Assembly: GCF_006345805.1 (NCBI RefSeq)
Contig: NC_042998.1
Location: forward strand, 88,660,001-88,724,000
Direction: 5' to 3'
Source of the DNA: Octopus sinensis
Lineage: Eukaryota
Length of the DNA stretch: 64,000 nucleotides
The notes beneath the pieces were generated by a model. It had not been told where the DNA came from and ran no database searches. It worked only from the letters and a program-made list of their open reading frames with translations. The first letter of the stretch is position 1, and each line of letters begins with the position of its first letter. Of this stretch, positions 8,086 to 51,601 are shown one piece after another. A program made the position numbers and the translations under genes.

Positions 8086-8133
8086 ATGATGTCTTCTTTT
8101 AAAGTAATAAAAGAATGGTTGGCTGAATACAAG
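8086..8133 (+). CDS. HYCC (FAM126): Hyccin/FAM126 (PI4KIIIalpha complex subunit), coding exon 1: MMSSFKVIKEWLAEYK
   Basis: Matches the recalled human hyccin N-terminus MFTSEKGVVEEWLSEFK. Donor GTATGT at 8134, phase 0. Confidence 0.85.
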
Positions 8134-15082: not shown

Positions 15083-15187
15083 GCATTATCCGAATCTGAA
15101 ATCCACACATATGCAAATACTCTGCGTCACAATGATGAACTGGTTACTTCTCTATATGAAGTGTTAGAGCAGAGGCCAGGAGTTGAG
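15083..15187 (+). CDS. HYCC (FAM126): Hyccin coding exon 2: ALSESEIHTYANTLRHNDELVTSLYEVLEQRPGVE
   Basis: Acceptor TTTCAG and donor GTAAGA, 105 nt, phase 0/0. Aligns with human [34 protein letters not shown]. Confidence 0.9.
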
Positions 15188-16272
15188 GTAAGATATATAT
15201 TGATGGCTTTATCTCTTGGGTTATTTCCATTAAGTTAGGAAAGTTAAGTAATTTCTGCATTTATTTAATTGTTTTATTGTTTTTCCTTCTTTTATGCTTT
15301 TACTTGTTTCAGTCATTGGACTGTGGCCATTCTGGATAGTTCATGTAATGTGTGAGTCAGAAATTTAATGTTTTATGTCTGTGAAATGTATGCAATAAAT
15401 ACAGATTTGTAATAGCATATGTTTTAATCAATGTGCTGTCTAGACTTGAAACCACAAGCGATTTGAGAAACTGATTGGTTGGTTATGAAGGTTACTGCTT
15501 CAAACATACAAATCAGTTGACCATGCAGGTATGAACATGTAGGGTGAAAGGGATAACATTACCTGAATAGAAATGTGTCATGAGTTACAAAATAGAAAGT
15601 ACACATAGAACAAACCAAAGGGATGATGGTGTGTAATTGAACCCTTTCATGATTAAACATCACAGATTGTAATGATGTAATGCATGATTGTAATGTATGG
15701 AAGAGGTGTTGTATTGCAGATCCATTCATTACATATGAATATGACAAAATGAATAAATAAATATTTACAAGAATGATGATGATGATGTTGATATATTTCA
15801 TGTGAAGGAATGTGAAAGAAAAGGCACTTTAGATACAAGTTGAGATGAAAAATGTTTGACTCTCCAACAAAGAGATGACAGATACTGAAAGACTGTCATT
15901 TTTAAAATGTTGCAAGCTAATGACAAAAAATTCTCTCAAGGCAAGCCTAAATGTCAAATTGTGCTGTGTATGTTACATACTACTTGTCACAATTTTTGTC
16001 TTATAGGAATAGAGATAGTGTACTATAATTTCCTCTCTTCCTTACATTCATCTCTTTATCCTTCTGTCTATCTGTTTATCCAGCCATATGTTCATTCATT
16101 CTGAGATGAGTCTATATGAGTCATTACTCAGAGTTTTCCATTTCCAGCTTTCAGGAGTCACCCAGTGATATATATGCATGCATATGTATGTTCACACACA
16201 CACATCAAAATTAACAGAATGAGATAAAAATCCAAAGCTGTGAAACATTTCAGAACATTTATAAAGAGAAGG

Positions 16273-16319
16273 TCTTACAGCTGTTTCCGGGATAATTTTA
16301 TATATCCCTTCATCGGAGA
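16273..16319 (-). ncRNA. Minimal type I hammerhead ribozyme-like motif (U4C variant), Penelope-type
   Basis: The minus strand reads TCT-CCGATGA-A-GGGATA-tataaaat-TATCCC-G-GAAA-CAGCTG-TA-AGA. It has a 3-bp stem I, a 6-bp stem II, a palindromic stem III and a GUA triplet. Confidence 0.6.
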
Positions 16320-16365
16320 TGGTGTGAGAAAATAGTTAAGCAATAGTTAAGCATGTATATAAATA

Positions 16366-16417
<52 letters not shown>

Positions 16418-16588
16418 TAATCCAAACAAGAAAACAAAAAGACAACAACGCAAGGATGTGGAACAAATAAAGTATTATTGGATGCTCAGGGAAGAAGGGA
16501 AGATATATATATATATATACACACACATACATGTACATGCATATATGAGTACAGGATGTCACCAATGGTCCAAATAACATGAAGTGCA

Positions 16589-16949
16589 CAAACAAGCAAG
16601 GTAAAAATGAGTGAAACACGTAAACGAGAAAAAAATGGAAAACAAGACAAGTTGACACAGAGAAAGGACCCTTTATCAGTTGTTGGCTGTCTATCTACTT
16701 CTCATTTTGAGCAGGGAGCAACTGTTGTTGAAGACTCATCCCTACTTTGACCCTCCATAAATCCTAAATTTTATTTTAGAATTTATGGGAGCAACTGTCT
16801 TTGAAGACTCATTTGTTGTTGAATCTTGAAATGAGGAATAGATAGACAGCTGACACCTGATGAAGAGTCCTTTCTCTGTGTTAAATTGTCCTGTTTTCCA
16901 TTTTTTCTCATTGTTTACATCTTTCACTCATTTTTCTTTCATTTGTTTG
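16589..16949. repeat. Diverged inverted repeat, arms about 120 bp (16589-16707 and 16829-16949), Penelope-LTR-like
   Basis: GAGAAAGGACCCTTTATCAGTTGTTGGCTGTCTATCT mirrors AGATAGACAGCTGACACCTGATGAAGAGTCCTTTCTC. The spacer has a 26-bp direct repeat, GGGAGCAACTGT..TTGAAGACTCAT. Confidence 0.8.
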
Positions 16950-17956
16950 TATATTTCATGTTATTTGCACCGTTGGTGACATCCTGTACCCATATAATCA
17001 TGTATATATACATATATATATATTACATATTATTTACTATTTAATTGAATGTGACATATCCGTTTCCGGGTAAAATATATATATATATATATATAGAGAG
17101 AGAGGAGTTTGTATGATTGTGTATAGAGGGATATATATTATTCAAAGAAATTCCAACTCTGTTTTTTATGTTTTATTTATAATCTTTATAATGTTAATGT
17201 AGAATATAGAATATATAGTATAAATAATATATTTAGTAAAATGAAATGAAGTATTGATTGTCTTATTGAATAGATGAAATATTGAATATAAAATATTAAG
17301 GGACTAGTATACTTTCTTGCATTAAAGCAGTCTTCAAGGTCCCAGGTTGTGACAGGAGTGTTTCAACTGTGGTTGACTGACTGTCTTTTGTACTTTATAT
17401 ATGTTCTTGTGGGCAGCAGTAGTAGTTGTTTAGCTATTTTTAGAAATGATGCCAAACCATTTTTCAATTTTTATTTTTAGAAATGATGATAGCAGTACTT
17501 TTTAGAGATTTTTTTGTTTTGGTTATAGGGATAAGATTTTTAGACCCCAAATAAGATTAATTTAATCATTGTTTGTTAAGCTTGGGTTTGAATTTCTTAA
17601 TAAAGTCCTTAATAAAGTCCGATCGGTCACGTGGGAAGAGAATAGAGAGAAGTAGTGGCAGAGGGACAGAAGAATTAAGGAGGGGCGAGAAAAAATGACA
17701 AGGACACAGTCAAGTGAAAAGTAGAGGGAAAGTGAGTAAGAAGAGATGGCAAAGAAATGTGAGAGAGGGGGATCAAGAGAATGAAGAGTGGAATGAACGA
17801 ATAAGCATGAAAGGGTTGATAGAAATAGAGTTGTACAAGATTTTGTAAAATGTGTACTTACATATAAGAGAACAAAGTGTACATATGCCGCTATATATAT
17901 AAAATACAAAATGGGACAAGAACGCAAAACATCCCGACCACTAGGTGATACAAAAA

Positions 17957-18670
17957 GGGACATCTTGCTTTCATGTGCCCCTTTTTGCTGCATAGGAAGC
18001 ATGTTGGTGGTCTTCATTCTACTGTTATTCGAAGTCTGCTGTCTTCTGGGAGTATTATCTCCTCCGTTATACTATGCAAGTCTTCCAAAGATACCTGCAT
18101 GGTCACTTTGAGGCTATATTCCCACCAATTGGACTTTGGGGTCCTCTTCATCTTGAGGATCTCTACTCCATCCTTCATATCATTCATAATGGATGCTACC
18201 AGCCATTCTTCCTCGATTTCGGTGGGTACTCTTCCAACTCTCACTCTGGCTGCACGTTTGCCACAGTACGTTGGAAGTAGTATCCATTTCTTTGTCCGTA
18301 ACGGCTCCGTGGCGTGGTTTATGGCATCTTCTTCGTTGTCAAATCTTACTTCCACTGAGCCATACTTCTTTCCGCGTGTGTAGAATGTGGTCAATTTTTT
18401 AACATTTTCTCGGCATTCCTCTATTTCTTCTGTTGGGGCTACCACTATTTTGTTTGAGGACGTAGATAACGTTCTGTATACTACCGTCCTCTTTTCTATG
18501 CTTTTCATCAGTTCTTCTGGGTGAGTCAGCTTTAGACCAGTTCCCTCCTTTTTTACAAATTTTCTTCCTTCCTTCCTCTTTCTTGTGTCCATTTCTATTT
18601 CTTGCAATTCCAGGGTGCTGGTATTTATTCCTTGTGTCGTCGCTGCTGTGTAACTTTGTCTATTCTCCAT
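17957..18670 (-). pseudogene. L1/Tx1-like ORF1 (gag-like) relic: RRM-like region plus CCHC zinc knuckle, one premature stop
   Basis: A 218-aa ORF (GSVEVRFDNEEDA, RVRVGRVPTEI) ends at TGA 18014-18016. In-frame readthrough gives RPPT-CFLCSKKGHMKARC-P (C-x2-C-x4-H-x4-C, 17960-18001). Confidence 0.75.
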
Positions 18671-18854
18671 CTTTCTTCACTCCTCCTGTAGATGGGGATT
18701 ATACAGGTGTAAATGAACAAGTGACTGAAATTCAATAATTTACACAATCCAACGAATCTTGGTTCACCCGTGCGGGGAAACCTGCAACAAACATACAATA
18801 TCAGTGTGTAACAATTTGAACTCACATCAAAGAAATCACAACCAACACCCGTTA

Positions 18855-19015
18855 GTGACAATCGTGAGTTGTCGATGAAAAGTAGGCCTTCCTTTGCAGA
18901 AAGCGAACGTTAAACGATGATGATGATATCCTTTATCCAGTGACGAAAAGTCACTGATATCGATATATATTTGCAAAGGAAGGCCTACTTTTCATCGATA
19001 ACTCGTGATTGTCAC
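18855..19015. repeat. 44-bp inverted repeat (18855-18898 and 18972-19015)
   Basis: Three mismatches, all G-U pairs in + strand RNA. The spacer holds an RTE tail snippet and a CAGTGAC-gaaaa-GTCACTG hairpin. Confidence 0.9.
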
Positions 19016-19057
19016 ACACTGATGACGGGTCAATACCCAGAAACTCGAGTCCGTGTG
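19013..19057 (+). ncRNA. Minimal type I hammerhead ribozyme with canonical core (Penelope/retrozyme type)
   Basis: CACACA-CTGATGA-C-GGGT-caat-ACCC-A-GAAA-CTCGAG-TC-CGTGTG. All core nucleotides are present, with a GUC cleavage triplet (cut after 19051) and a palindromic stem III. Confidence 0.75.
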
Positions 19058-19181
19058 TATCATAGGTTGAAGACGGAAAGGATGGTTTCCTTTTGCAAAT
19101 ACTGATAGGGCACAGAAAGTGTGTCAATATGGAAAACGGACGCTAAACGATGATGATGATGATGATGATATATATATATAT

Positions 19182-20610
19182 ATCATCATCATCATCATCG
19201 TTTAGCGTCCGTTTTCCATGCTAGCATGGGTTGGACGGTTCTACTTGGGCCTGTGAAGCCAGAAGGCTTCATCAGGCCCAGTCAAATCTGGCAGTGTTTC
19301 TACGGCTGGATGCCCTTCCTAACGCCAACCACTCCGTGAGTGTAGTGGGTACTTTTTACGTGCCACCCGCACAGGTGCCAGACAGAGCTGGCAAACGGCC
19401 ATGAACGGATGGTGCTTTTTATGTGCCACCGGCACAAGGGCCAGGCGAGGCTGGCAACGGACACAAAACGGGGCGGTGCTGGCAATGGTCGCGAAACGGA
19501 AGGTTCTCTTACATGCCACCAGCACTGGTAACACATCTGCAATTTCCATTGATCGATTTCGATTCTGATCCTCACTTGCCTCAACGGGTCTTCACAAGTA
19601 GAGTTTCGACATGCCACCGGCACTGGTAACACATCTGCAATTTCCATTGATCGATTTCGATTCTGATCCTCACTTGCCTCAACAGGTCTTCACAAGTAGA
19701 GTTTTGTGTCCCAAGAAGGGAAGGTATGCACACGTAGGCTGGCTCCATCCCATGTAGAAAGCCACGGGTTATGGACTCACTTGTCCTGCTGGGTCTTACA
19801 CCTTTTCTACAAATCGAGCAGGGCCATCAACCTGAAGGCGTTTGTGATTTGTCTACCTTCCTACTGATTACGACTTTGGTTTTAGCTAGATTGACTCTGA
19901 GGCCCTTCGATTCTAATCCTTGTTTCCACACCTGAAACTTCTCCTCCAATTCTGATAGCGACTCAGCAATTAGAGCAAGGTCATCAGCATAGAGGAGCTC
20001 CCAAGGGCATCCTGTCTTGAATTCCTCCGTTATTGCCTGGAGAACTATGATAAATAGGAGGGGGCTGAGTACTGAGCCTTGGTGGACCCCTACCTCTACC
20101 CGGAATTCTTCACTGTACTCGTTGCCAACCCTCACCCTACTAGCAGCGTCCCTATACATGGCCCGCACAGCTCTCACTAGCCATTCATCTATCCCTAGTT
20201 TCCTCATTGCCCACCAGATAAGGGATCGGGGGACCCTGTCGAAGGCTTTCTCCATGTCAACAAAAGCCAGGTACAGGGGCTTATCTTTGGCTAGGTATTT
20301 CTCCTGCAGCTGCCTTACCAGGAATATAGCATCAGTAGTACTTTTCCCTGGCACAAACCCAAACTGCATCTCATCTAAACTAACTCTCTCTCTAATTAGT
20401 TGGGCTATGACCCTCTCCGTAACCTTCATCACCTGATCCAACAGCTTGATACCTCTGTAGTTATTTGTATCTAGGGCGTCACCTTTACCTTTGTAGCAGT
20501 TGACTATTATGCTGCTACACCAGTCATTAGGTATGACTCCTTTGTGTATCACCTGATTAACTATACGGGTGACTAGGCTATAGCCGATACTACCAGACAT
20601 TTTGAGCATC
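19182..20610 (-). mobile_element. RTE LINE copy B: 5'-truncated with a 742-bp internal deletion
   Basis: RT ORF 19827-20612 (YADD, FVDMEKAFD). The junction GGTCTT|ACACC at about 19797 corresponds to loss of 21237-21978 in copy A. (CAT)n tail at 19182. Confidence 0.95.
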
Positions 20611-23600
20611 ATATCATCATCATCATTTAGCGTCCGTTTTCCATGCTAGCATGGGTTGGATGGTTCTACTGGGGTCTGTGAAGCCAGAAGGCTTCATCAG
20701 GCCCAGTCAAATCTGGCAGTGTTTCTACGGCTGGATGCCCTTCCTAACGCCAACCACTCCGTGAGTGTAGTGGGTGCTTTTTACGTGCCACCCGCACTGG
20801 TGCCAGACAGAGCTGGCAAACGGCCACGAACGGATGGTGCTTTTTATGTGCCACCGGCACGAGGGCCAGGAGAGGCTGGCAACGGACACGAAACGGGGCG
20901 GTGCTGGCAACGGTCGCGAAACGGAAAGTTCTCTTACATGCCACCGGCACTGGTAACACATCTGCAATTTCCATTGATCGATTTCCATTGATCGATTTCG
21001 ATTCTGATCCTCACTTGCCTCAATGGGTCTTCACAAGCAGAGTTTCGACATGCCACCGGCACTGGTAGCACATCCGCAATTTCCATTGATCGATTTCGAT
21101 TCTGATCCTCACTTGCCTCAACACGTCTTCACAAGTAGAGTTTTGTGTCCCAAGAAGGGAAGGTATGCATACGTAGGCTGGCTCCATCCCATGTAGAAGG
21201 CCACGGGTTGTGGACTCACTTGTCCTGCCGGGTCTTCTCGCGCACAGCACACTTCCAGAGGTCTCGGTCTCTAGTCATTTCCTCAGTGAGACCTAAAGTT
21301 CGAAGGTCGTGCTTCACCACCTCGTCCCAGGTTTTCCTGGGTCTGCCTCTTCCACAGGTTCCCTCAACCGCTAGGGTGTGGCACTTTTTCACACAACTAT
21401 CTTCATCCATTCTCGCCACATGACCATACCAGCGCAAACGTCTCTCTTGCACACCACAACTGATGCTTCTTAGGTCCAGCTTTTCTCTCAAGGTACTTAC
21501 ACTCTGCCGAGTGTGAGTACCGGCATTACACATCCATCGGAGCATACTGGCTTCATTTCTAGCGAGCTTACGCATATCCTCAGCAGTCACGGCCCATGTT
21601 TCACTGCCATGTAGCATGGCTGTTCGTACACACGCATCATACAGTCTGCCTTTCACTCTGTGCGAGAGGCCTTTTGTCACCAGCAGAGGTAAGAGCTCTC
21701 TGAACTTTGCCCAAGCTATTCTTACTCTAGCAGTTACACTTTCAGCACACCCGCCCCCGCTGCTGACTTGGTCACCTAGGTAACGGAAACTATCAACTAT
21801 TTCTAGTTTTTCTCCCTGGAAAGTGACGGAAGTTGGTCTCAGAGCATTTTCAGTGTTTATTGTTCCTGAGCATCTGCCACATACAAAAACCATCTTCCTA
21901 GTTAGCCTTCCTTTGACATTGCTGCATCTCTTATGTGTCCATAGCTTACACTTGGTGCATCTTATAGAGTTTCTACCTACACCTTTTCTACAGATCGAGC
22001 AGGGCCATCTACCTGAAGGTGTTTGTGATTTGTCTACCTTCCTACTGATTACGACTTTGGTTTTAGCTAGATTGACTCTGAGGCCCTTCGATTCTAATCC
22101 TTGTTTCCACACCTGAAACTTCTCCTCCAGTTCTGATAGCGACTCAGCAATTAGAGCAAGGTCATCAGCATAGAGGAGCTCCCAAGGGCATCCTGTCTTG
22201 AATTCCTCCGTTATTGCCTGGAGGACTATGATAAATAGGAGGGGGCTGAGTACTGAGCCTTGGTGGACCCCTACCTCTACCCGGAATTCTTCACTGTACT
22301 CATTTCCAACCCTCACCCTACTAGCGGCGTCCCTATACATGGCCCGCACAGCTCTCACTAACCATTCATCTATCCCTAGTTTTCTCATTGCCCACCAGAT
22401 AAGGGATCGGGGGACCCTGTCGAAGGCTTTCTCCATGTCAACAAAAGCCAGGTACAGGGGCTTATCTTTGGCTAGGTATTTCTCCTGCAGCTGCCTTACC
22501 AGGAATATAGCATCAGTAGTACTTTTCCCTGGCACAAACCCAAACTGCATCTCATCTAAACTAACTCTCTCTCTAATTAGTTGGGCTATGACCCTCTCCG
22601 TAACCTTCATCACCTGGTCCAACAGCTTGATACCTCTGTAGTTATTTGTATCTAGGGCATCACCTTTACCTTTGTAGCAGTTGACTATTATACTGCTACA
22701 CCAGTCATTGGGTATGACCCCTTTGTGTATCACCTGATTAACTATATGGGTGACTAGGCTATAGCCGACACTTCCAGACATTTTGAGCATCTCTGCAGTG
22801 ATTCCTGATGGGCCTGGGGCTTTCCCTGTCTTCATGCTTCTAATTGCCTTAGCTACCACAGAACTATCAACTCGGATAGCTGGTCCCTCTGTTGGGTCAA
22901 CATTCGGCAGACTCTCTTTATCCCATTCATTTTCTTCATTCAGCAACCTTTCATAGTGGCATCTCCAAACCTCTCTCTTTGCATCCTCATTTAGCGCAAG
23001 TGAACCATCTTCCATGCGAACACACTTCTCTCCTACCACATCACGATTCTCTCTCACACACTGTCTTGCAACACGAAACACCTCCAGTCTTTGGTCCTCA
23101 CGGCGCAGAACATTGGCAAATTTTTTCTTATCTGCTTCCCCTCTGGCTAAATAAACCTGTCTCCTAGCTTCTCTTTTGGCAGTCTGATACAATTCCCTGC
23201 TACCCCCATTTTTCCAGACCTTCCAAGCCTGTCTCTTTTCTCTAATAGCCCTGTCTACAATATTGTTCCACCACCACGTTATTCTAGGTCGAGAGGGGAC
23301 TTTGCACCAGCCACAGATCTGGTCAGTGGCTCTCAGCAGGTTGTCCCTTAGAAACGTCCAGCTGTCTTCTACCCCCTGTGATGCTCTATCCCCTTCTACT
23401 TCGTCAGAGGCTTCAAGTAATATGTCCCTAAATCTCTGTCCATTTGCAGGATCTTTAAGCTTCCAGATCCTTCTTCTCCATATTTGTCGTCTTCTGGTTG
23501 TCCTCCTAGTCCTGATCCTAAAGTCACTAACTACCAGTCTATGTTGTGGGGTACATTCTTCACCTGGGAAGGTTTTGGCATTTATAAGCAGCCATCTCTC

Positions 23601-24273
23601 CCTTTGCCTTGTAAGGATGTAGTCAATTTGGCTGGTATGTTGGCCCGATTGGTAAGTGACTAGGTGGCTGGTAGGTTCCTGAAGTTAGTGTTGCAAATCA
23701 TAAGATTATTTGCATCGCAGAACTCCAGCAGCCTGGTTCCCTCCTCGTTGCGGGAGCCATAGCCATAGCCTCCATGTACGCCATGGAAGCCCCCAGCATG
23801 TCGTCCAACGTGACCATTGAAGTCACCAGCCACAAAGATAAGGTCTCTGTCGTTCGTCAATGAGGTAGTCTGCAGTAGAGTGTCATAGAATCGGTCTTTC
23901 TGTCCATCGGGTAGCCCCGACTGAGGAGCATAGGCTGATATAATGGTTGCTAAACTATGATGAAGCACTAATCTAATCTTAAGTATTCTGTCACTTACTC
24001 TGATTACCTCAATTACTTTATCTACCCATTTCTCAGCGATAAGTATACCCACGCCACCAACCCCGTCAGTGTTCCCTGCCCAGAAAATCTTGTACCTGCA
24101 TTCCTTGCCTGTGAGGAACCTAGCTGATCCTCCTCTCCACCTTATTTCTTGCATGCAACATATATCCACACATCTCCGTTCAAGCATCTCGACTATCTCA
24201 CCAGACCTACCTTTCAGAGTGCCAACGTTGAGGGTGCCAACCCTGAGGGTGTGGAAGGCATGGGCTCTAGAGA

Positions 24274-24275
<2 letters not shown>
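20611..24275 (-). mobile_element. RTE-clade LINE copy A: near-complete APE endonuclease + RT ORF with one frameshift, plus 3' UTR and tail
   Basis: APE motifs TLNVGT, MQE, SAYAP and GDFNGHVG (23660-24277). A 1-nt deletion at about 23676 (AGGAACCT) is followed by a stop-free frame through SQIDYIL and PQHRLVV to the RT (YADD) and the stop at 21216. Confidence 0.95.
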
Positions 24276-24318
<43 letters not shown>

Positions 24319-24340
24319 TATATACATATATATACATATA

Positions 24341-24403
<63 letters not shown>

Positions 24404-25231
24404 TGGGCAAAGTTCAGAAAGCTCCTACCCCTACTGGCAACAAAAGGTCTCTCCCTCAGAGCGAAAGGTAGATTGTATGATGCATGTGTGCGAACTGTCA
24501 TGCTTCACGGTAATGAAACATGGGCAGTGACTGCAGAGGACATGCGTAGACTTGAAAGAAATGAAGCTAGCATGATCCGCTGGATGTGTAGTGTCAGTGT
24601 GCACGCAAGACAGAGTGTAAGCATCCTAAGAGAAATGCTGGATATAAGAAGCATCAGATGTGTGCAAGAGCGACGCTTGCGATGGTATGGTCATGTGCTG
24701 CAGATGGATGAAGAGAGATGTGTGAAGAAGTGCCACTCCCAAACAGTTGAAGGTATCAGGGGGAGAGGTAGACCCAGGAAGACATGGGATGAGGTAGTCA
24801 AGCATGACCTCAGAGCATTGGGCCTCACTGAGGCAATGGCGAAAGACCGAGATCTCTGGAGATATGCTGTGACTGCAAAGACCCGGGATGCTTTCTGCAG
24901 CAATTCCACATACCCCCTACCCATTCAAAGTACCCCGGATCCCCAAAGTACCCCGGACCCAGTTTCCCCCGTGCCGCTGGCACGTTAAAAGCTCGAACCG
25001 ATCGCGACCAATGCTGGACCCCCCGGCCCCTGTGCAGGTGGCACGTAAAAAGCACCCAATCCACTCACGGAGTGGTTGGCGTTAGGAAGGGCATCCAGCC
25101 GTAGAAACTCTGCCAAATCAGACTGGAGCCTGGAGCGGCCCCTGGCTTCCCAGACCCCGGTCGAACCGTCCAACCCGTGCTAGCGCGGAAAACGGACGTT
25201 AAACGATGATGATGATGATGATGATGATGAT
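24404..25231 (+). mobile_element. RTE LINE copy C, 3' fragment of a different subfamily
   Basis: ORF WAKFRKLLPLL...RWYGHV...GRPRKTWDEVVKHDL, a distinct 3' UTR and a (GAT)n tail. Confidence 0.9.
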
Positions 25232-25334
25232 ATATATATGTATATTATATATATATATATAATATATATATATATATATTATATATATATATTATATATT
25301 ATATATATATATATTATATATACAGATATGTGTG

Positions 25335-25380
<46 letters not shown>

Positions 25381-25739
25381 TATGTGTGTATATATATATG
25401 TGTATATATATAAATGTGTATATATATATATATATATGTATATTAATATATTTATAAATACATGTATGTATATATATATTAATATATTTATAAATACATG
25501 TATGTGTATATATATATATATATATGTATTAATATATTTATAAATGCATGTATATATTAATATATTTATAAATACATGTATGTATATATATATATATAAC
25601 TTAGAATAACTTAGAAAGGTTTTGGCCAGTATTGGCCCAGGCCATGTCTAACTTAATAGCACCACCTGGCGAAGTCTTTCAATTCAGGATTTGGGCACCA
25701 AGGCCCATTCGAAATATATTTATAAATACATGTATATGT

Positions 25740-25945
25740 CTGGCACCTGTGTCGGTGGCACATAAAATCACCCACTACACTCTCGGAGTGGTTGGCGTTA
25801 GGAAGGGCATCCAGCTGTAGAAACTCTGCCAGATCTGACTGGACTGGTGCAGCCTTCGGGCTCCCCAGACCCCAGTTGAACCGTCCAACCCATGCTAGCA
25901 TGGAAAGCGGACGTTAAATGATGATGATGATGATGATGATGATGA
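25740..25945 (+). mobile_element. RTE 3'-UTR/SINE fragment
   Basis: GGAGTGGTTGGCGTTAGGAAGGGCATCCAG...GCGGACGTTAAATGATGAT. Confidence 0.85.
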
Positions 25946-26274
25946 TATATTAATATATTTATAAATATATGTATGTATGTATATATATAATATATTTATA
26001 AATATATGTATATATATATATTAATATATTATAAATACATGTATGTATATATATATATTAATAATTTATAAATACATGTATGTATATATATATATGTATT
26101 AATATATTTATAAATACATGTAGGTATATATATATATATATTAATATATTTATAAATACATGTATGTATATTATATATATATATATATATATTAATATAT
26201 TATAAATACATGTATGTATATATATTTATATGTATATATATATATATATATATTAATATATTTATAAATACATG

Positions 26275-26301
<27 letters not shown>

Positions 26302-26310
<9 letters not shown>

Positions 26311-26472
26311 GTGAAGGGAAGAAATGGAGCTGAACGAAGATTCTACAGAATTCCTTTTATTATTTTCTACACATGTTTCAAAGGCCGCAAATTCGAAACT
26401 TGAGTAGAAAATAATAAAAGGAATTCTGTAGAATCTTTGTTCAGCTCCATTTCTTCCCTTCACTAAATATAT
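26302..26472. repeat. Near-perfect fold-back: 69-bp arms (26302-26370 and 26404-26472) with a 33-nt spacer
   Basis: Direct comparison shows one mismatch (GAACGAAG vs GAACAAAG). Confidence 0.95.
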
Positions 26473-26615
26473 TAAACTCAATTATCCGCGCTGAGGCACG
26501 GTTGCGACACCCCATGGTCGTAACTTCAACCGTGTTTTTCTGTTGTGATTTTTGCTACCCAGGTATCGGTTAAATTTTGAATAATCCGTAACAAGATAAC
26601 TCATTTATCCATTTC

Positions 26616-26654
<39 letters not shown>

Positions 26655-26844
26655 AATATATTTATAAATACATGTATATATATATATTAATATATTTATA
26701 AATACATGTATATATATATATCTATATATTAATATATTTATAAATACATGTATATATATATATTAATATATTTATAAATACATGTATGTATATATATTTA
26801 TATGTATATATATATATAAAACTATACATAAATATATGTATACT

Positions 26845-27245
26845 CTCTCTTTCCTCTTTTACTTGTTTTAGTTATTTAACTGTGGCCATACTGGAGCACC
26901 ACCTTTAGTCGAGCAAATCGACCCCAGGACTTATTCTTTGTAAGCCTAGTACTTATTCTATCGTTCTCTTTTGCCCAACCGCTAAGTTACGGAGTACGCA
27001 AACACACCAGCATCGGTTGTCAAGCAATGTTGGTTGGACAAACACAGACATAGAAACAGACACACACACATATTATATATACAATGGGCTTCTTTCAGTT
27101 TTCGTCTACCATATCCACTCAGAAGGCTTTGGTTGGCCCGAGGCTATAGTAGAAGACACTTGCACAAGATGCCACGCAGTTTGACTGAACCCGGAACCAT
27201 GTGGTTGGTAAGCAAGCTACTTACCACACAGCCACTCCTATGCCT
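26845..27245 (-). mobile_element. tRNA-derived SINE, same family as 60237-60646
   Basis: The reverse complement gives GCATAGGAGTGGCTGTGTGGTAAGTAGCTTG...CCGGGTTCAGTC... and the shared 3' end. Confidence 0.85.
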
Positions 27246-27527
27246 ATATATATAACTATATATAAATATATGTATATATATATATATATAGTTGTTTTTG
27301 AGTATACATTGTCTGGGAGACTCTTCTAACAGTTGAAGAAATAGCTAAGTTTTTGGCTGCTATTTCTAAAAGTTCGGTATGTGGTAAAGCAAAATTTTTT
27401 TTGCTGAACCCTAATTATATAAAGTAATGTTTAAATTTACCATAAATGGTCCTTTTACATACTGAACACTGCTTGGTGAAATTATTAATTACTAATTAAT
27501 TAATTAATTTTGCCTTTTATTATTATT

Positions 27528-27574
<47 letters not shown>

Positions 27575-27599
27575 ATATATGTATGCATATATGTATATA

Positions 27600-27765
27600 T
27601 ACACTCACGGAGTGGTTGGCGTTAGGAAGGGCATCCAGCCGTAGAAACACTGCCAGATCTGACTGGGCCTGATGAAGCCTTCCAGCTTCACAGACCCCAG
27701 TTGAACCGTCCAACCCATGCTAGCATGGAGAACGGACGCTAAATGATGATGATGATGATGATGAT
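27600..27765 (+). mobile_element. RTE 3'-end fragment
   Basis: Close match to the 3' terminal 165 bp of copies A and B, with a (GAT)n tail. Confidence 0.85.
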
Positions 27766-27844
27766 GTATATGTGTATATATATAATATATATATATATGT
27801 TAATATATTTATAAATACATGTATGTATATATATTTATATGTAT

Positions 27845-27893
<49 letters not shown>

Positions 27894-28064
27894 TATATGT
27901 ATGTATATGTGTATATATATATGTATATGTGTGTATATATATATATACGTATATTTTTTTTGATTTTTATCTAGTTTCAGCTCACAAGCTGTGGCCATGC
28001 TGGGGCACCGCCATTTGGTGTTGCTACATGATTTTACTTCACGAATGCTTTTTAGCAATTGCCA

Positions 28065-29665
28065 TTTGGTGCATGAGAGAGTTCAATGCAGCTGCCCTCA
28101 TCTGCACCTCCTGCCGTGAAGTTGGTTCATCTGGGACGCCTGACAAGAAGAGATTCAGTTTTATTTTAAAACCATCTGCATCCACCCCATGCAGGTCTCT
28201 TAGGTTCTTTGGGAGGATATTGAAGAGCTGTGGACCTCAGAAGCCCAGGCTATCACAGGATCTTGTACTACATCTTGATGGCAAATTTGGAGTCCTTGGC
28301 ACTATGCAGTGGTGCCCAGTACTGGCATTTGTGTAACTCTTGATGCCAAAGTTTGGGACAAGTCCTTCTAGGATCTTCCAGATGTATATTATGGCATATC
28401 TTTCTCGCTTACACTCTAAGGAATAGAATCTCAATCTCTTGAGTCTTTCCCAATAGCTTATATGCTGCACAGAGGCTATCATCTTCGTGTAGCTTCGTTG
28501 GATCGCCTCAAGTTCTGTGATTAACTTGACACTGGATGGTGACCATAGCTGAGAGCAATAGTCAAAGTGGCTTAGGACAAGTGTCCTCCAGAGGACCATC
28601 ATGGTTTCCTGGTCTCTTGTTCTAAAGGTTCTAAGAATCCATCCAGTCAGCTGCCTACATTTCATTGCCAATTTAGCAACATGCACATGAAAGGTTGCAT
28701 CATCACTCATGTAAATACCCAGGTCTCACACTGATTGTGCCTCTGGGATTGCAGTCCCTCCAGGTCCAGTGTATTTATTGGGTATTGCATTTAGTTTTGC
28801 ATGCTGATAGCATAAAGCTTGAAACTTTTCAGCATTGAACTGCACGCTATTCTTTTCAGCCCACTTGTATATTTTGTCCAGCTCACATTGCAGGTGCTTA
28901 TTGTCTTCAGGGTTCTGTATTGCCTGTGAAACTTTTGTATCATCTGCATAACTTGTGATCGTGGCTCTCTGCGTGGCTGAGGGCATGTCTGAGAGGGCCA
29001 TTATGAACAGTAGTGGTCCCAAAACAGTGCTTTGCGGAACACCGCTCACTATTTGCGTGTTAATGGAAGTGGCCCCATTGGCTACTTCCACCTGACTTCT
29101 ATCCTTCAGAAAGTCATGAAGCCATTCTCCCAATTTTCCAACTATGCCAAGATCACGCAGTTTGTGACATATCATTCCATGATCAACTTTATCAAAGGCC
29201 TTTGCAAAGTCGAGATATATGACTTCCACATTTGAGTGGTTGAGCAGTCGTTTCAGCACCCAGTCATAGTGTTGTAGGAGCTGAGTTAAGCAGCTTCTTC
29301 CTGGTCAGAAACCATGTTGAGTGTTAGGCAGCAAGTCATTTTCTTCAAGGAAGGTGATTAGTTTCCTTCTGACTATTCGTTCCATGACCTTGCTGATGTG
29401 TGAGGTCAGAGAGATAGGTCTGTAGTTCTTGGCCTCCGCTCTGCTACCTCCTTTATGAATAGGGCTTATTTTACCTTCCTTCAGTTTTCTTGGAAGTTTG
29501 CCAGTTGCAAGCAAGGAAGCTCTGAAAGAGGAACTGCAGTGGTCTTGCTAGGACTCTCTTACATACTTTTAGAAGGATCACTGGGAATCCATCGGGGCCA
29601 GTGGCTGAGTTTGTTTTCATTTCATCAATAGCCTTTATTACATCATCTTCCTTTATATTGGAAGA
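28065..29665 (-). mobile_element. CR1-group LINE RT fragment, frameshifted
   Basis: Successive ORFs contain ATGPDGFP, NYRPISLTSHISKVMERIV, YLDFAKAFDKVDH, SGVPQSTVLGPLLF, YADDTK and FDYCSQLWSP. Confidence 0.92.
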
Positions 29666-29748
29666 CGATGTAATATGTGTATATCTATATGTATATGTGT
29701 GTATATATATATATATGTATATGTGTATATACATATATATATATATAT

Positions 29749-30037
29749 GTGGAGACGCAATGGCCCAGTGGTTAGGTCGTAGGATCGCCGTTTCGATCCC
29801 CAGACCAGGCGTTGTGAGTGTTTATTGAGCAAAAACACCTAAAGCTCCACGAGGCTCCGGCAGGGGATGGTGGCGATCTCTGCCGTACTCTTTCGCTACA
29901 ACTTTCTCTCACTCTTTCTTCTGTTGGCCTGCTCGCTTAGCCAGTGGGGGTGGCGTCATTTGAAGGCTAAAACAATGCGAAGCGCATTGTGACCAGCGAT
30001 GTGTAGCAACATCTGATAGCCTGGTCAATCACGGTGA
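29749..30037 (+). mobile_element. tRNA-derived SINE, second family
   Basis: A-box-like TGGCCCAGTGG and B-box-like GTTTCGATCCC. A homologue lies on the minus strand at 46845-47150. Confidence 0.8.
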
Positions 30038-30142
30038 TATATATATATATATATATGTATATGTGTATATATATATATGTAATATATATATATATATGTA
30101 TATGTGTATATATATATGTATATGTGTATATATATATATATA

Positions 30143-30175
<33 letters not shown>

Positions 30176-30244
30176 TATATGTATATGTGTATATATATAT
30201 ATGTATATGTGTATATATATATGTATATGTGTATATATATATGC

Positions 30245-30291
<47 letters not shown>

Positions 30292-30292
<1 letters not shown>

Positions 30293-32003
30293 CTCTTATT
30301 ATAAAAGGCAGATTTTATCTGCCTCCCTTTGGGAGTTATAGAAATCTACAATATAGGATTTCTTCAATTACAATTTACCTAGCATTTTTAAGAGTAGAAT
30401 GCATCGTGTCATGCCAGGTCCAGTTTTTTAAATTTAAACTCCAATTAAGCAAAATTTACAGAAAACTCACATTCTGGTGTGTGTGTCAAATGCTTTTCTT
30501 AGTCTGGTTTACACCACACGCAAACGCACACACACAGTGTGCAACGAATAAAATGAAAGTAAATAGCGACAGAGTGATTTGAGGAAGACTAAACTGAAAG
30601 TATTTAGACCACTACTCAAAAAATAAAAAAACACAGCAAACAGAAACAAATAAATACATAACCATTTACTCCTCACACAATTTCTTCAATTAGAATTTAC
30701 CTAAGATTTTTCAGAGTACTTCAGTGGGTGATGCCATAAAAAATTTCTTTCAATTTTGCCACCAATTAAGACAAAATTCGAGAAAACTCAATATTTTAAC
30801 ATATCACTCCGAAAGCATTGATGTACATGTGTGCGTGCGTGAGTGTGTGTGTGTCATTCCTCACACACACGCATACACATATATATACAACTACATACAA
30901 CTACATACACCTACAACTACATACAAACACGTGTGTGTTTGTTATTAGTAAAAAAGGCGCCAAAACTCAACTCACTTATCATTCCAACACATTTGCAAAG
31001 ACACACGGACGGACAGAAAAGGTAAATTGGTTTTTATTTTACTCTGTATATATTTTATTATATAATATTATATATAGATATCATCATCATCATCATCATC
31101 ATCATTTAGCGTCCGTTTTCCATGCTAGCATGGGTTGGACGGTTCAACTGGGGTCTGGGGAGCCCGAAGGCTGCACCAGGCCAGTCAGATCTGGCAGTGT
31201 TTCTACAGCTGGATGCCCTTCCTAACGCCAAATATATAATTGCAGTATGAAACAGTGTTTATGTATAAACAGACGACACTTATATATAGTTACCAAGCCG
31301 CCCGAATTTACCTATTCATATTTAAATGAGAATATCAGAGCAAATCTCTTTAGTACATTCGTGAAAACACGTATTATACTTCGTAAACACTTCAACTACA
31401 GTTTTGTACAAAAATCGAAGTGTAATTTTAATTCCGTGAATTATGGGAGATTTTTTTCCGAAATTTGTTCCTATTGTGTTTTCAAAATTTGTAATTCTGA
31501 CAAAAAATGGATACGAATTTCATTATATCAAGTAGCGAGTCAGAATTCGAAGGATTTTCTACTGAAGACCTTCATAAATCTAACTCTATGACTGAAAAAA
31601 AAAAAGCATCTTTATATAAGAGTGAAGTTGTGTGTCTGTCTACTACGATTTAGATTCCTAACTACTCCCACATTTTGCGGTGCAGTTTAACCAAAAGCGG
31701 GTATCTTATAGTCGTGATTCATATCGAGCCCTTCTGGGTATTAGCGTGCGTCTATGATGAGTCTACGATTTAAAAAAATTTACCATCATGTTTTTCCATT
31801 TTAATGCATTTTTTTTGCTTTTATATAAGGGATGTAACTCTCTAAAAATATCTACGATGTGTCAACGATTTAAAAAAAAATTTACCTGAATTTTTTTTCA
31901 ATTTTTAATGCATTTTTTTGCTATTTTTTGGCTATAACTCTCTAAAAATGCTTATATAGTTATTTCCCTTACAAACCCGAGCAACGCCGGGCGATACTGC
32001 TAG
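30292..32003 (+). mobile_element. Composite non-autonomous Helitron (outer 5' TC at 30292, inner 5' TC at 31609, shared 3' hairpin + CTAG)
   Basis: Inserted between A30291 and T32004. The 3' end is CCCGAGCAACGCCGGG (hairpin 31976-31991), 8 nt, then CTAG. The two starts are TCTCTTATTATAAAAGG and TCTTTATATAAGAGTG. Confidence 0.7.
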
Positions 32004-32004
32004 T

Positions 32005-32184
32005 GCATATATATATACACATATGCATATATATATACACATATGCATATATATATATACACATATACATATATATATACACATATACATATATATATAT
32101 ATACACATATACATATATATATATATATCACCGTGATTGACCAGGCTATCAGATGTTGCTACACATCGCTGGTCACAATGCGCT
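32005..32184 (-). repeat. Inverted copy of 29981-30037 plus its patterned microsatellite
   Basis: 32128-32184 is the exact reverse complement of 29981-30037 (57 bp). Confidence 0.95.
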
Positions 32185-32300
32185 AGATATGAAAATTGAC
32201 AAAGTATAGTACAACAGTTTTGCGATGGAATGGTGAATCTACTTTCTCATTCTCAGAAAATGAAACGTTTTGGACTCACGACACATTTAAATAATAGCAA

Positions 32301-32373
<73 letters not shown>

Positions 32374-32496
32374 GAGATAGTTGCTATTATTTAAATGTGT
32401 TGTGAGTCCAAAACGTTTCTTTTTCTGAGAATGAGAAAGTAGATTCACCATTCCATCGCAAAACTGTTGTACTATACTTTGTCAATTTTCATATCT
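32185..32496. repeat. 124-bp inverted repeat (32185-32308 and 32373-32496) around (CT)n(AT)n
   Basis: Two mismatches by eye. Confidence 0.95.
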
Positions 32497-32627
32497 TGGC
32501 ATCTGAATCAGTTGGATATACAATAGCCTGACCAAAAGTACCGGCTATTGCAAGCAAAAATTAATATTGAAAAAAAAAATGCTTTTGACCAAATTTGGAC
32601 ATACAATAGATTACCAATAACAATGAT
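32378..32627. mobile_element. Shorter copy of the putative MITE at 62302-62697
   Basis: Shares TTTCATATCTTGGCATCTGAA.CAG.TGGA...CGGCTATTGCAAG...CCAAATTTGGACATA with the 62-63 kb copies. Confidence 0.55.
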
Positions 32628-33399
32628 ATATATATATATATACATATATATATGCATAAATTCTATTTGAGTGAAGAAATGAATGAAATATTGTAAATAG
32701 AATTATGAGCTTTCACTGAATATTGACTACAGAAAATAGTCTCATATTAGGGCATTTAAGTGCCTGTAATGGAGACACCAACACAGCCACTCTTTTTTTC
32801 CTGTTAAGTTTGGGGGAAATATGATTTCTTTGTGGTAAATGTGTAAACCTGTGCAAATTCTGTGTGAATTAGGAAATTTTGGCAATTTAAAAATAAATTA
32901 TTAGCCTTCACCACTTTCCAATCCCTTGGTTTGGGGTTCACTTCCACTGCATGACTCCTTGGGCAGCTGTGTTCTATTATAGTGCTGGACTGACCAAAGC
33001 CCTGTAAGTAGATTTGGTAGTCAGAAATTTATAGAAGTTCACCACACAAACGCACATACACACCGCACAAACATATGTATCTATATATGTATGTGTGTGT
33101 GTAGTGATATTGTGTAATTGTTGTAAACCAGTCACCAGTGGTATTTGTTTCCAACCTCCTGTGTTCAGCCTTGCAAAAATATTACCTTATTTGGAAACAG
33201 GCAAGGGTTGGCAAGAGGAAGGGCATCTGTCTAGAAAATCTGCTTCAGCAAATTCCATTGGACTTATGTGAGTATGCAAAAGTGGAAGTTAAATGATGAT
33301 GATGATGATATGTTGTTAGATTTGTATATTTCAATGTATATTAATCATATATTAATCAAAGATTTGGATACATATATTTAATTTACTTATTTTCTGCAG

Positions 33400-33534
33400 A
33401 TTTTAGATCCTATATGTCACCAGTTATTTGAATTCTTTCGGTCTAAAGAATTAGAACTACAACGCTTCACTTTTGAATTCATTCCTACATTGACATGGCT
33501 ATATTTGTCAATGGTGACAAGCAATGAGAAAAAG
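33400..33534 (+). CDS. HYCC (FAM126): Hyccin coding exon 3: ILDPICHQLFEFFRSKELELQRFTFEFIPTLTWLYLSMVTSNEKK
   Basis: Acceptor TTTTCTGCAG and donor GTATGT, 135 nt, phase 0/0. Strong match to human [36 protein letters not shown]. Confidence 0.95.
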
Positions 33535-51276: not shown

Positions 51277-51601
51277 GAAGAAGACTCCGCCGGTTACGAC
51301 GACGAGGGTCCCAGCTGATACGATCAACGGAACAGCTTGCTCGTGAAATTAACGTGCAAATGGCTGAGCATTCCACAGACACGTGTACCCTTAACGTAGT
51401 TCTCGGGGATAATCAGTGTGACACAGAGAGTGACAAGGCTGACCCTTTGAAATACAAGTACAACTCATTTTTGCCAGCTGAGTGGACTGGAGCAACGTGA
51501 AATAAAGTGTCTTGCTCAAGGACACAACGCGTCGCCGGGAATCGAACTCACAACCTTACGATCATGAGCCGAATGCCCTAACCACTAAGCCACGCGCCCT
51601 C
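51277..51601 (-). mobile_element. Young full-length tRNA-derived SINE with a perfect 17-bp TSD
   Basis: ACTAGAGCACCCTTCTA at 51260-51276 and 51602-51618. The minus strand starts GAGGGCGCGTGGCTTAGTGG (A box), has GAGTTCGATTCCC (B box) and ends in (TTC)n. Confidence 0.95.

What the first reader, a model, noticed from the sequence alone, without database searches (positions are those of the whole stretch)
19013..19057. Canonical hammerhead ribozyme core on the sense strand of a hyccin intron
Seen: CTGATGA (19019-19025), a GGGT/ACCC stem II, GAAA, the palindrome CTCGAG, a GUC triplet, and CACAC/GTGTG stem I with one junction mismatch that could be CpG decay. Established: minimal type I hammerheads with palindromic stem III occur in Penelope-like elements and retrozymes and cleave efficiently only as dimers. 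Inference: this is a fairly intact Penelope/retrozyme-type ribozyme inside the host pre-mRNA. If active, it would cut the 18-kb intron co-transcriptionally.
Basis: partly seen in the sequence, partly recalled or inferred. Interest (0 to 1): 0.7.

Follow-up and report, generated by a model that had tools for sequence, protein, structure and literature searches.

The report
Solitary hammerhead ribozyme motif in intron
A real but lone and probably disabled copy of a small self-cutting RNA motif, of the kind carried by Penelope-like and retrozyme mobile elements, lies inside an intron of the hyccin gene; this is ordinary genomic debris for an invertebrate-type genome, not a new regulator.

Summary
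All invariant hammerhead core bases are present in type I order. Helix I has 6 positions, helix II 4 bp, and helix III is an 8-nt palindrome, ACUCGAGU.

It is not chance. The expectation is 1e-4 to 3e-3 per window. A model built from three published active retrozyme hammerheads ranks it first in the window (21.4 bits). A eukaryote-like metagenome contig, L005, carries a structurally intact hammerhead that is 30/32 identical, with the same C..A flank and the same CUCGAG helix III but a different, fully paired helix I. Rfam scores the window motif only 11.8 bits (threshold 34), but it also misses the intact relatives.

It is probably inactive here:
- the 1.1/2.1 pair is broken;
- monomeric helix III is unstable;
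- no second copy exists in 64 kb for dimer formation;
- its 5' half is locked in a 53-bp inverted repeat (-105 kcal/mol) with a mutilated mirror copy.

No tandem array and no Penelope-type ORF were found among the ORFs scanned.

Verdict: a new member of a known kind, of low interest.

The parts
19005..19063 (+). Whole hammerhead-like motif, including the closing stem (GUGAU 19005-19009 / AUCAU 19059-19063) and internal loop 1 (UGU 19010-19012 / U 19058)
   Evidence: Read; pairs listed; own covariance model R1 matches 19012-19058 at 21.4 bits, E about 7e-4, top hit of the window
19013..19018 (+). Helix I, 5' strand (CACACA, positions 2.6-2.1); A19018 is unpaired with C19052
19019..19025 (+). 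Core box CUGAUGA (C3-A9)
   Evidence: exact pattern match
19026..19039 (+). Helix II: C19026/A19039 non-pair, GGGU/ACCC stem, CAAU loop
   Evidence: the same C..A flank and stem occur in the intact relative L005
19040..19043 (+). Core GAAA (G12 A13 A14 A15.1)
19043..19050 (+). Helix III: the 8-nt palindrome ACUCGAGU. As a monomer it gives 2 bp plus a UCGA loop with no predicted stability. As a self-duplex it gives -10.7 kcal/mol
19051..19052 (+). Predicted cleavage site, after C17 of the GUC triplet
   Evidence: Position follows from the hammerhead numbering; cleavage itself not tested
19052..19057 (+). Helix I, 3' strand (CGUGUG, positions 1.1-1.6)
18846..18898 (+). Arm A of an inverted repeat. 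It is the complement of arm B and, on the minus strand, a mutilated mirror of the 5' half of the motif (it lacks the 7 nt ACACUGA)
   Evidence: I1: 53 nt, 87% complementary; alignment; hairpin of -105 kcal/mol, z = -12.4
18972..19030 (+). Arm B of the inverted repeat. It contains the closing stem, the helix I 5' strand, CUGAUGA and the start of helix II
19050..19101 (+). Arm C: an imperfect complement of arm B (18968-19022), so helix I continues as a roughly 50-nt rod with the ribozyme core at its tip
   Evidence: Local alignment score 39 against a shuffle mean of 17.8 (sd 3.5), 0 of 300 shuffles as good, I7
18899..18930 (+). Extremely 5'-truncated 3' end, with (GAT)n tail, of the window's abundant SINE-like repeat, inserted in the loop between arms A and B
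   Evidence: (D3)
19129..19170 (+). A second truncated SINE-like tail, bounding the unique hammerhead-bearing stretch on the right
15188..33399 (+). Hyccin intron 2 (18,212 nt, GT..AG), which holds the motif in sense orientation

Best explanation
This is a solitary, stranded copy of a type I hammerhead ribozyme of the sort carried by Penelope-like elements and their non-autonomous derivatives, the non-LTR retrozymes.

In a working element, transcripts carry two or more copies. The palindromic helix III (ACUCGAGU) of two copies pairs to build a stable dimeric ribozyme. Each core then cuts after GUC and releases unit-length RNA for circularisation and reverse transcription. This mechanism is taken from the literature and is inferred here, not shown.

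The hyccin copy arrived as part of a small head-to-head (inverted) insertion and has since decayed (inferred):
- its mirror copy lost 7 nt of the core region;
- the innermost helix I pair is broken;
- a SINE tail landed in the hairpin loop;
- no partner copy remains.

In the hyccin pre-mRNA the upstream arm pairs with helix I and the CUGAUGA box before the 3' half is transcribed. The ribozyme fold is therefore not expected to form, and the sequence is most likely removed with the intron without cutting it (inferred from folding, not tested).
For: - All invariant core bases are present in the correct type I topology.
- The architecture equals that of published self-cleaving retrozyme hammerheads: helix I of 6, helix II of 4 bp, GAAAC, a 6-nt palindrome, GUC. 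Examples are mussel CUGAUGA-GUCU..AGAC-GAAA-CGCGCG-UC and axolotl Ax353, which has a U/U non-pair at 10.1/11.1 (PMC7229834).
- A covariance model built only from those three published sequences ranks the motif first in 128 kb, at 21.4 bits and E about 7e-4, in the canonical register.
- The chance expectation is 1e-4 to 3e-3 per window.
- L005, an AT-rich eukaryote-like metagenome contig with a tRNA-like head, carries AACUCU-CUGAUGA-C-GGGU-GAAA-ACCC-A-GAAA-CUCGAG-UA-AGAGU. It is 30/32 identical to the window motif over the core, helix II and helix III, while its helix I is entirely different yet paired.
- L007 shows the same genomic architecture: a hammerhead in one arm of a 350-nt palindrome with a mutated mirror copy in the other arm. 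This fits published descriptions of dual opposite-strand min-hammerheads 100-700 bp apart (PMC4209133) and of inverted truncated copies next to PLE pseudo-LTRs (PMC8557442).
- Dispersed monomers are common: in Xenopus about 44% of retrozyme copies overlap introns (bioRxiv 10.64898/2026.07.22.740005).
- Evidence for inactivity: the hammerhead fold is -9.5 kcal/mol against an MFE of -16.5. Helix I and closing-stem pair probabilities are 0.000 once arm A is included. The A/B hairpin is -105 kcal/mol. Monomer helix III is 0.0 kcal/mol against -10.7 for the self-duplex. There is no second motif in the window and no tandem repeat.
Against: - The family evidence rests mainly on one metagenomic contig of unknown organism. 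No other copy could be sought in the source genome, because no eukaryotic genome collection was available.
- The unique 18930-19128 stretch has no other copy in the window.
- No PLE ORF lies nearby. The neighbouring reverse transcriptases are LINE-type, with an APE endonuclease.
- Rfam Hammerhead_1 gives only 11.8 bits against a threshold of 34.
- The A/B similarity stops inside the motif, so the inverted-copy story is not proven. The 7-nt difference could be an insertion that created CUGA rather than a deletion in the mirror copy.
- Secondary-structure energies ignore tertiary loop-loop contacts, proteins and co-transcriptional kinetics, so inactivity is inferred, not shown.
- C/A non-pairs can form protonated wobble pairs, so the helix I defect may be mild.
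Confidence: 0.72

Rival explanations
1. Chance look-alike. A (CA)n/(TG)n-flanked hairpin tip in AT-rich, repeat-laden intron DNA happens to spell the hammerhead boxes.
For: - At genome scale, 4 to 126 such matches are expected by chance.
- The Rfam score is far below threshold and falls in a shifted register.
- Helix I is made of dinucleotide repeats and prefers a slipped register.
- The mirror arm lacks exactly ACACUGA, so the CUGA box might be a 7-nt insertion.
- There is no other copy in the window.
Against: - L005 shares 8 further positions beyond the 20 specified in the search pattern (the C and A flanks and UCGAGU). That is about 1.5e-5 per hit by chance, and L005 forms a perfect helix I of different sequence.
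- The independent model R1 gives E about 7e-4.
- Only 1 of 719 decoy cores matched.
- The motif is 53% G+C with 3 CpGs in 45 nt, in a window of 37% G+C and CpG o/e 0.34.
Confidence: 0.05
2. Active intronic ribozyme. The motif self-cleaves in hyccin pre-mRNA, perhaps gated by the upstream hairpin, and so affects hyccin expression.
For: - The core is intact.
- The C/A flank is shared with an intact relative, so it is not necessarily a defect.
- An axolotl retrozyme hammerhead with a U/U non-pair at the same place still cleaves.
- It lies in sense orientation in the intron.
- By my own recollection, not checked here, intronic hammerheads are known in amniotes (HH9/HH10).
Against: - The 1.1/2.1 pair is broken. 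By my recollection of Werner and Uhlenbeck 1995, whose text was not obtainable, innermost mismatches strongly reduce the chemical step.
- There is no partner copy for dimerisation, and monomer helix III is unstable.
- The 5' half is sequestered by arm A.
- PLE-type minimal hammerheads show no detectable monomer cleavage and only low dimer cleavage in vitro.
- Retrozyme copies are depleted from introns, which suggests that active ones are selected against there.
Confidence: 0.08
3. Still-functional unit of a mobile element. The self-paired stretch 18968-19101 (arm B, ribozyme tip, arm C) is a short retrozyme-like unit that is transcribed and processed together with copies elsewhere, so the hammerhead works for the element and not for hyccin.
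For: - The B/C rod is significant, with z about 6.
- Retrozyme RNAs are small and highly self-paired, and consensus lengths down to 51 bp are reported.
- A weak degenerate repeat of the motif lies 83 nt downstream, at 19093-19126, with p about 0.003.
Against: - There is only one complete motif and no tandem array. A single unit cannot release itself by two cuts.
- It has the helix I junction defect.
- It is interrupted and bounded by SINE tail insertions.
Confidence: 0.1

Closest known systems
Type I hammerheads of metazoan non-LTR retrozymes (Cervera and de la Pena 2020, PMC7229834), especially mussel Mg353 and axolotl Ax353
   Same: - Same order of parts and same helix sizes.
- GAAAC followed by a 6-nt palindrome and then a UH triplet.
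- Mussel helix III (ACGCGCGU) has the same form as ACUCGAGU.
- Axolotl Ax353 also has a non-pair (U/U) at 10.1/11.1 and needs a dimer.
- Helix I continues into a self-paired rod.
   Different: - Here there is a single copy, not a 150-450-bp tandem repeat.
- The 1.1/2.1 pair is broken.
- No evidence of circular RNA.
- It is embedded in an inverted repeat.
Minimal hammerheads in pseudo-LTRs of Penelope-like elements (Cervera and de la Pena 2014, PMC4209133)
   Same: - An extra or unpaired nucleotide between A9 and the first G-C pair of helix II.
- A palindromic 15.2-16.2 segment.
- Mostly dispersed single motifs.
- Pairs of motifs on opposite strands 100-700 bp apart.
- Low intrinsic activity.
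   Different: - No PLE ORF (RT plus GIY-YIG) among the ORFs scanned in the window.
- Helix II is short (4 bp, against 6-8).
- There is also an extra A on the 3' side, before G12.
- Helix III is of the canonical short type rather than absent.
Intronic hammerheads HH9/HH10 of amniotes (Rfam RF02275, RF02277; recalled from memory, not tested here)
   Same: A type I hammerhead in sense orientation in an intron of a protein-coding gene.
   Different: - Those are conserved across species and fold as stable monomers.
- Here conservation is untestable with these tools.
- The motif carries a helix defect and a competing hairpin.
Metagenomic motif L005 577-621
   Same: 30/32 identical over CUGAUGA-C-GGGU..ACCC-A-GAAA-CUCGAG-U; the R1 score is 21.1 bits against 21.4 for the window motif.
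   Different: - L005 has a fully paired 5-bp helix I of unrelated sequence, a GAAA loop 2 and a GUA cleavage triplet.
- Its flanks are unrelated.
- It has no inverted partner.

Membership tests
Hammerhead ribozyme, type I | Invariant core: C3 U4 G5 A6 N7 G8 A9, G12 A13 A14, the A15.1-U16.1 pair, and H17 (not G) | tested here: met
   CUGAUGA 19019-25, GAAA 19040-43, U19050, C19051
Hammerhead ribozyme, type I | Three helices around the core, with helix I open and helices II and III capped | tested here: inconclusive
   - The topology is correct.
- Helix I has 5 of 6 pairs, with 1.1/2.1 unpaired.
- Helix II has 4 bp plus a C/A non-pair.
- Helix III has only 2 bp as a monomer.
- The hammerhead fold is not the predicted MFE.
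Hammerhead ribozyme, type I | Reaches the Rfam RF00163 gathering score (34 bits) | tested here: not met
   11.8 bits, E = 2.8, in a shifted register; no hit at gathering threshold. The structurally intact relatives L005 and L007 are also missed, so this test has low power for this variant.
Hammerhead ribozyme, type I | Site-specific self-cleavage after H17 | not testable with these tools
   Needs in vitro transcription or mapping of RNA ends.
Non-LTR retrozyme | Head-to-tail tandem repeats (about 150-450 bp), each with a type I hammerhead | tested here: not met
   One motif only in 64 kb. TRF finds no array covering it. There is only a weak degenerate echo at 19093-19126.
Non-LTR retrozyme | Unit RNA that is highly self-paired, with helix I extending into a rod | tested here: met
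   Arms B and C, 18968-19022 / 19050-19101, z about 6; MFE of 18968-19101 is -47.9 kcal/mol.
Non-LTR retrozyme | Expressed as small circular RNA | not testable with these tools
   No transcriptome data available.
Penelope-like element (pseudo-LTR hammerhead) | ORF with a telomerase-like RT and a GIY-YIG endonuclease, flanked by repeats that carry the hammerhead | tested here: not met
   Pfam on 18 of the larger ORFs found only RVT_1 with an APE endonuclease (LINE type), DDE_3 and a weak CCHC. No GIY-YIG was found. ORFs under 90 aa were not scanned.
Penelope-like element (pseudo-LTR hammerhead) | Inverted, truncated partner copy forming an inverted repeat next to the hammerhead-bearing repeat | tested here: inconclusive
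   The A/B inverted repeat includes the 5' half of the motif. Similarity ends inside the motif and does not continue outward (score 21 against a null of 20.6). The same layout is clear in L007.
Penelope-like element (pseudo-LTR hammerhead) | Extra nucleotide between A9 and G10.1; palindromic 15.2-16.2 | tested here: met
   C19026 precedes GGGU; CUCGAG is palindromic. Both features are listed as family traits in PMC4209133.

The most novel reading that the evidence does not exclude
The layout A9-C-[GGGU..ACCC]-A-G12, with one unpaired nucleotide on each side of helix II, may be a conserved and catalytically competent hammerhead variant. It is shared by the hyccin motif and by L005, and current Rfam models cannot see it. 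The hyccin copy might then retain residual self-cleavage gated by the upstream hairpin, so that cutting occurs only when arm A is unavailable.
Probability: 0.12. Interest if true: 0.5.

Novelty: new member of a known kind. Interest (0 to 1): 0.22.

Why it matters
It matters little for hyccin biology. Dispersed single hammerhead motifs from Penelope-like elements and retrozymes are common in invertebrate and lower-vertebrate genomes, and many lie in introns.

Two modest points are useful:
- Rfam hammerhead models miss this variant class even when it is structurally intact, so genome annotations under-count such motifs.
- The locus shows how a ribozyme copy can be silenced by an inverted partner copy that pairs with its 5' half.

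If the motif did cleave, it would be an invertebrate counterpart of the amniote intronic hammerheads. However, by my own recollection (Dye, Gromak and Proudfoot 2006, not checked here), cutting an intron co-transcriptionally need not prevent splicing.

Tried and rejected
- **Rfam.** Searches at gathering threshold and at E <= 10 gave only a sub-threshold, mis-registered Hammerhead_1 hit. The C/D-box snoRNA hits at 18911-19006 are artefacts of the GAT repeat.
- **Paralogues through proteins.** The gag-like ORF 18017-18676(-) and the spliced hyccin N-terminus found nothing. The protein collection seems to lack metazoan sequences, so orthologous introns could not be fetched.
- **Exact-pattern scans.** The 33-nt pattern in metagenomes found nothing. 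The 26-nt pattern and the arm sequence in prokaryotic genomes found nothing. Two patterns in viral contigs found nothing. Only the 26-nt pattern in metagenomes succeeded.
- **CpG decay as the cause of both non-pairs.** Both are C/A at CpA sites, which was attractive. It was rejected for A19039 because L005 has the same A. It remains possible for A19018; alternatively, C19052 derives from U, since published retrozyme hammerheads have A2.1-U1.1.
- **The second model hit at 51371-51423(-).** It lacks G8 and GAA, and its flanks are unrelated. It is treated as unproven.
- **Similarity of the mirror copy beyond arm A.** Not significant.
- **L001, L003 and L004.** They match the pattern but do not fold as type I three-way junctions.
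- **Werner and Uhlenbeck 1995.** The paper could not be read.

Full report
**Observation.**

The sequence at 19013-19057 reads CACACA CUGAUGA C-GGGU-CAAU-ACCC-A GAAA CUCGAG UC CGUGUG. In hammerhead numbering this gives:
- C3-A9;
- a helix II of GGGU/ACCC;
- G12-A14;
- A15.1-U16.1 closing the 8-nt palindrome ACUCGAGU;
- C17, followed by the helix I 3' strand.

Beyond helix I there is an asymmetric internal loop (UGU/U) and a 5-bp closing stem, 19005-19009/19059-19063.

The host gene is hyccin. Three exons at 8086-8133, 15083-15187 and 33400-33534 splice in frame and score 84.5 bits against Pfam Hyccin. The motif is on the sense strand, 3.8 kb into the 18,212-nt intron 2.

**Is it more than chance?**

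- A first-order Markov model of the window predicts 3e-3 matches per window for a descriptor just permissive enough to admit the motif. It predicts 1e-4 if the 15.2-16.2 segment must be palindromic. At the scale of a 2.7-Gb genome these become about 126 and about 4.
- On the real sequence, 719 decoy cores with the same base composition produced one match in total and none with a palindromic helix III.
- A relaxed descriptor finds no other candidate on either strand.
- The motif is a G+C-rich, CpG-dense island: 53% G+C and 3 CpG in 45 nt, in a window with 37% G+C and CpG o/e 0.34.

**Family tests.**

Rfam finds nothing at gathering threshold. When only 73 nt are searched, Hammerhead_1 appears at 11.8 bits (threshold 34) in a shifted register.

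I built a covariance model from three published, experimentally self-cleaving retrozyme hammerheads: coral Amil224, mussel Mg353 and axolotl Ax353 (PMC7229834 supplement). With filters off, the motif is the top hit of the window, at 21.4 bits and E about 7e-4, in the canonical register.

The published sequences have the same build:
- mussel has CUGAUGA-GUCU-UUUGU-AGAC-GAAA-CGCGCG-UC;
- axolotl Ax353 has a U/U non-pair at 10.1/11.1.

**A relative elsewhere.**

A scan of metagenome contigs with CTGATGANGGGTNNNNACCCNGAAAC returned seven loci.

L005 is an AT-rich contig with a tRNA-like head and no long ORFs. It carries AACUCU CUGAUGA C-GGGU-GAAA-ACCC-A GAAA CUCGAG UA AGAGU.
- The unspecified positions agree with the window motif: C, A and UCGAGU, giving 30/32 identity.
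- Helix I is a different sequence with five perfect pairs, and loop 2 differs.
- It scores 21.1 bits with my model.
- The Rfam hammerhead models do not detect it, even in an 81-nt search.

Two conclusions follow. The hyccin motif belongs to a real hammerhead sequence family, and the C..A flank of helix II is a shared trait rather than decay. The Rfam negative is therefore weak evidence.

L002, L006 and L007 are one locus seen three times. It carries CCAGCUC CUGAUGA U-GGGU-GUCA-ACCC-C GAAA CAUG UA GAGCUG and a second hammerhead 1.7 kb away on the same strand.

**Context in the window.**

The 5' half of the motif, up to ACGGGU, is the right arm of an inverted repeat. The arms are 18846-18898 and 18972-19030, 53 nt at 87% complementarity, and the complementarity resumes after a 7-nt bulge, ACACUGA.
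- As RNA this hairpin is -105 kcal/mol, with z = -12.4.
- Read on the minus strand, the left arm is a mirror of the 5' half of the motif that lacks those 7 nt.
- Beyond it the similarity is not significant.
- The loop holds an extremely 5'-truncated tail of the window's abundant (GAT)n-tailed SINE-like repeat. Another such tail bounds the unique region at 19129.

The same layout is plain in L007: a 350-nt near-perfect palindrome with an intact hammerhead in one arm and a mutated mirror (CAGAUGA) in the other.

The layout also matches published descriptions:
- dual minimal hammerheads on opposite strands 100-700 bp apart (PMC4209133);
- inverted truncated copies adjoining PLE pseudo-LTRs (PMC8557442).

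Helix I also continues into an imperfect rod with 19050-19101, with z about 6. That is expected for a type I motif in a self-paired retrozyme-like RNA.

There is no tandem array. No GIY-YIG or PLE-type ORF was found among the ORFs scanned. The neighbouring reverse transcriptases belong to LINEs with an APE endonuclease. The unique 18930-19128 stretch has no second copy in the window.

**Is it likely to work?**

- In isolation the hammerhead fold is -9.5 kcal/mol against an MFE of -16.5 kcal/mol. The MFE uses a slipped (CA)n/(UG)n register that pairs C3.
- With arm A present, the pair probabilities of helix I and the closing stem are 0.000. Arm A is transcribed first.
- Monomeric helix III has no predicted stability, while the palindrome self-duplex is -10.7 kcal/mol. 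A second copy would therefore be needed, and none exists within 64 kb.
- PLE-type minimal hammerheads show no detectable monomer cleavage and only low dimer cleavage in vitro. Amphibian retrozyme hammerheads need dimers, whereas most invertebrate ones cleave as monomers.

These are inferences.

**Comparison and novelty.**

The motif works like, and most probably descends from, the hammerheads of Penelope-like elements and non-LTR retrozymes.
- It meets the core and topology criteria of the type I hammerhead.
- It fails the Rfam score and the tandem-repeat criterion of retrozymes.
- It lacks a PLE ORF nearby.

It is best called a solitary derivative copy.

Such monomers are common. In Xenopus about 44% of retrozyme copies overlap introns, although they are depleted there after normalising for feature size. 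A cephalopod genome has 235 Rfam-level Hammerhead_1 loci (PMC6962438). The source organism of this window was not identified.

**Verdict.**

- The motif is a new member of a known kind and of low interest.
- The most novel reading still open is that the C..A-flanked helix II is an active variant invisible to Rfam and that this copy keeps hairpin-gated activity. I put that at about 0.12.

Noticed in passing
window 19182-19400 (-), and at least 11 other places, e.g. 6191, 9579, 20644, 25185, 25900, 27725, 31123, 40598, 55139, 60180: An abundant SINE-like repeat that ends ...GCTAGCATGGAAAACGGACGCTAAACG(ATG)n. Two tail-only fragments, at 18899-18930 and 19129-19170, flank the hammerhead region. 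A tail-to-tail pair forms a perfect 38-nt palindrome at 19129-19219.
   Followed up: partly
window 51371-51423 (-): A weaker hammerhead-like string: GUCACA CUGAUUA UCCC..GGGU A CACGUG UC UGUGG. G8 is replaced, GAA is missing, and helix III is the palindrome ACACGUGU. My model gives it 16 bits, E about 0.03. Its flanks are unrelated to the 19-kb locus. It could be a second decayed relic or chance.
   Followed up: partly
window 18017-18676 (-), continuing to about 17950: A 220-aa open frame followed, after a stop, by a CCHC zinc knuckle (zf-CCHC 18.5 bits, just under the cut-off). This is a gag- or ORF1-like remnant, 170 nt from arm A and antisense to the motif. It has no relatives in the protein collection.
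   Followed up: partly
window 21219-24346 (-): A nearly intact LINE ORF2: an 822-aa frame with RVT_1 (111.9 bits) preceded by an APE-type endonuclease frame. Further RT fragments lie at 19830-20645(-), 28729-29304(-) and 53456-53929(+).
   Followed up: partly
window 63360-63782 (-): Remnant of a DDE_3 (Tc1/mariner-type) transposase.
   Followed up: no
window 62359-62613 and 62908-63162: Identical ORF strings 549 nt apart, which indicates a recent local duplication.
   Followed up: no
window 19348-19471 and 19511-19704: Two short tandem duplications (63 nt x2 at 79% identity, 98 nt x2 at 97%) just downstream of the SINE-like copy.
   Followed up: no
L007 12360-12710 (also L002 and L006): A 350-nt near-perfect palindrome with an intact type I hammerhead in one arm and a mutated mirror copy (CAGAUGA, disrupted helix II) in the other. 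A second hammerhead lies 1.7 kb away on the same strand, and there is no long ORF.
   Followed up: partly
L003 2135-2160 and L004 7593-7618: CUGAUGA..GAAAC boxes around a GGGU/ACCC hairpin sit at the tip of a long perfect hairpin whose 5' and 3' flanks pair with each other. This is not a three-way junction, so it is hammerhead-like boxes in a different fold.
   Followed up: no
L005 577-621, L007 12608-12652 and 10935-10976: Rfam release 15 hammerhead models do not report these structurally intact type I motifs (short palindromic helix III, extra nucleotide at helix II) at gathering threshold. For L005 there is no report even at E <= 10 on 81 nt.
   Followed up: yes
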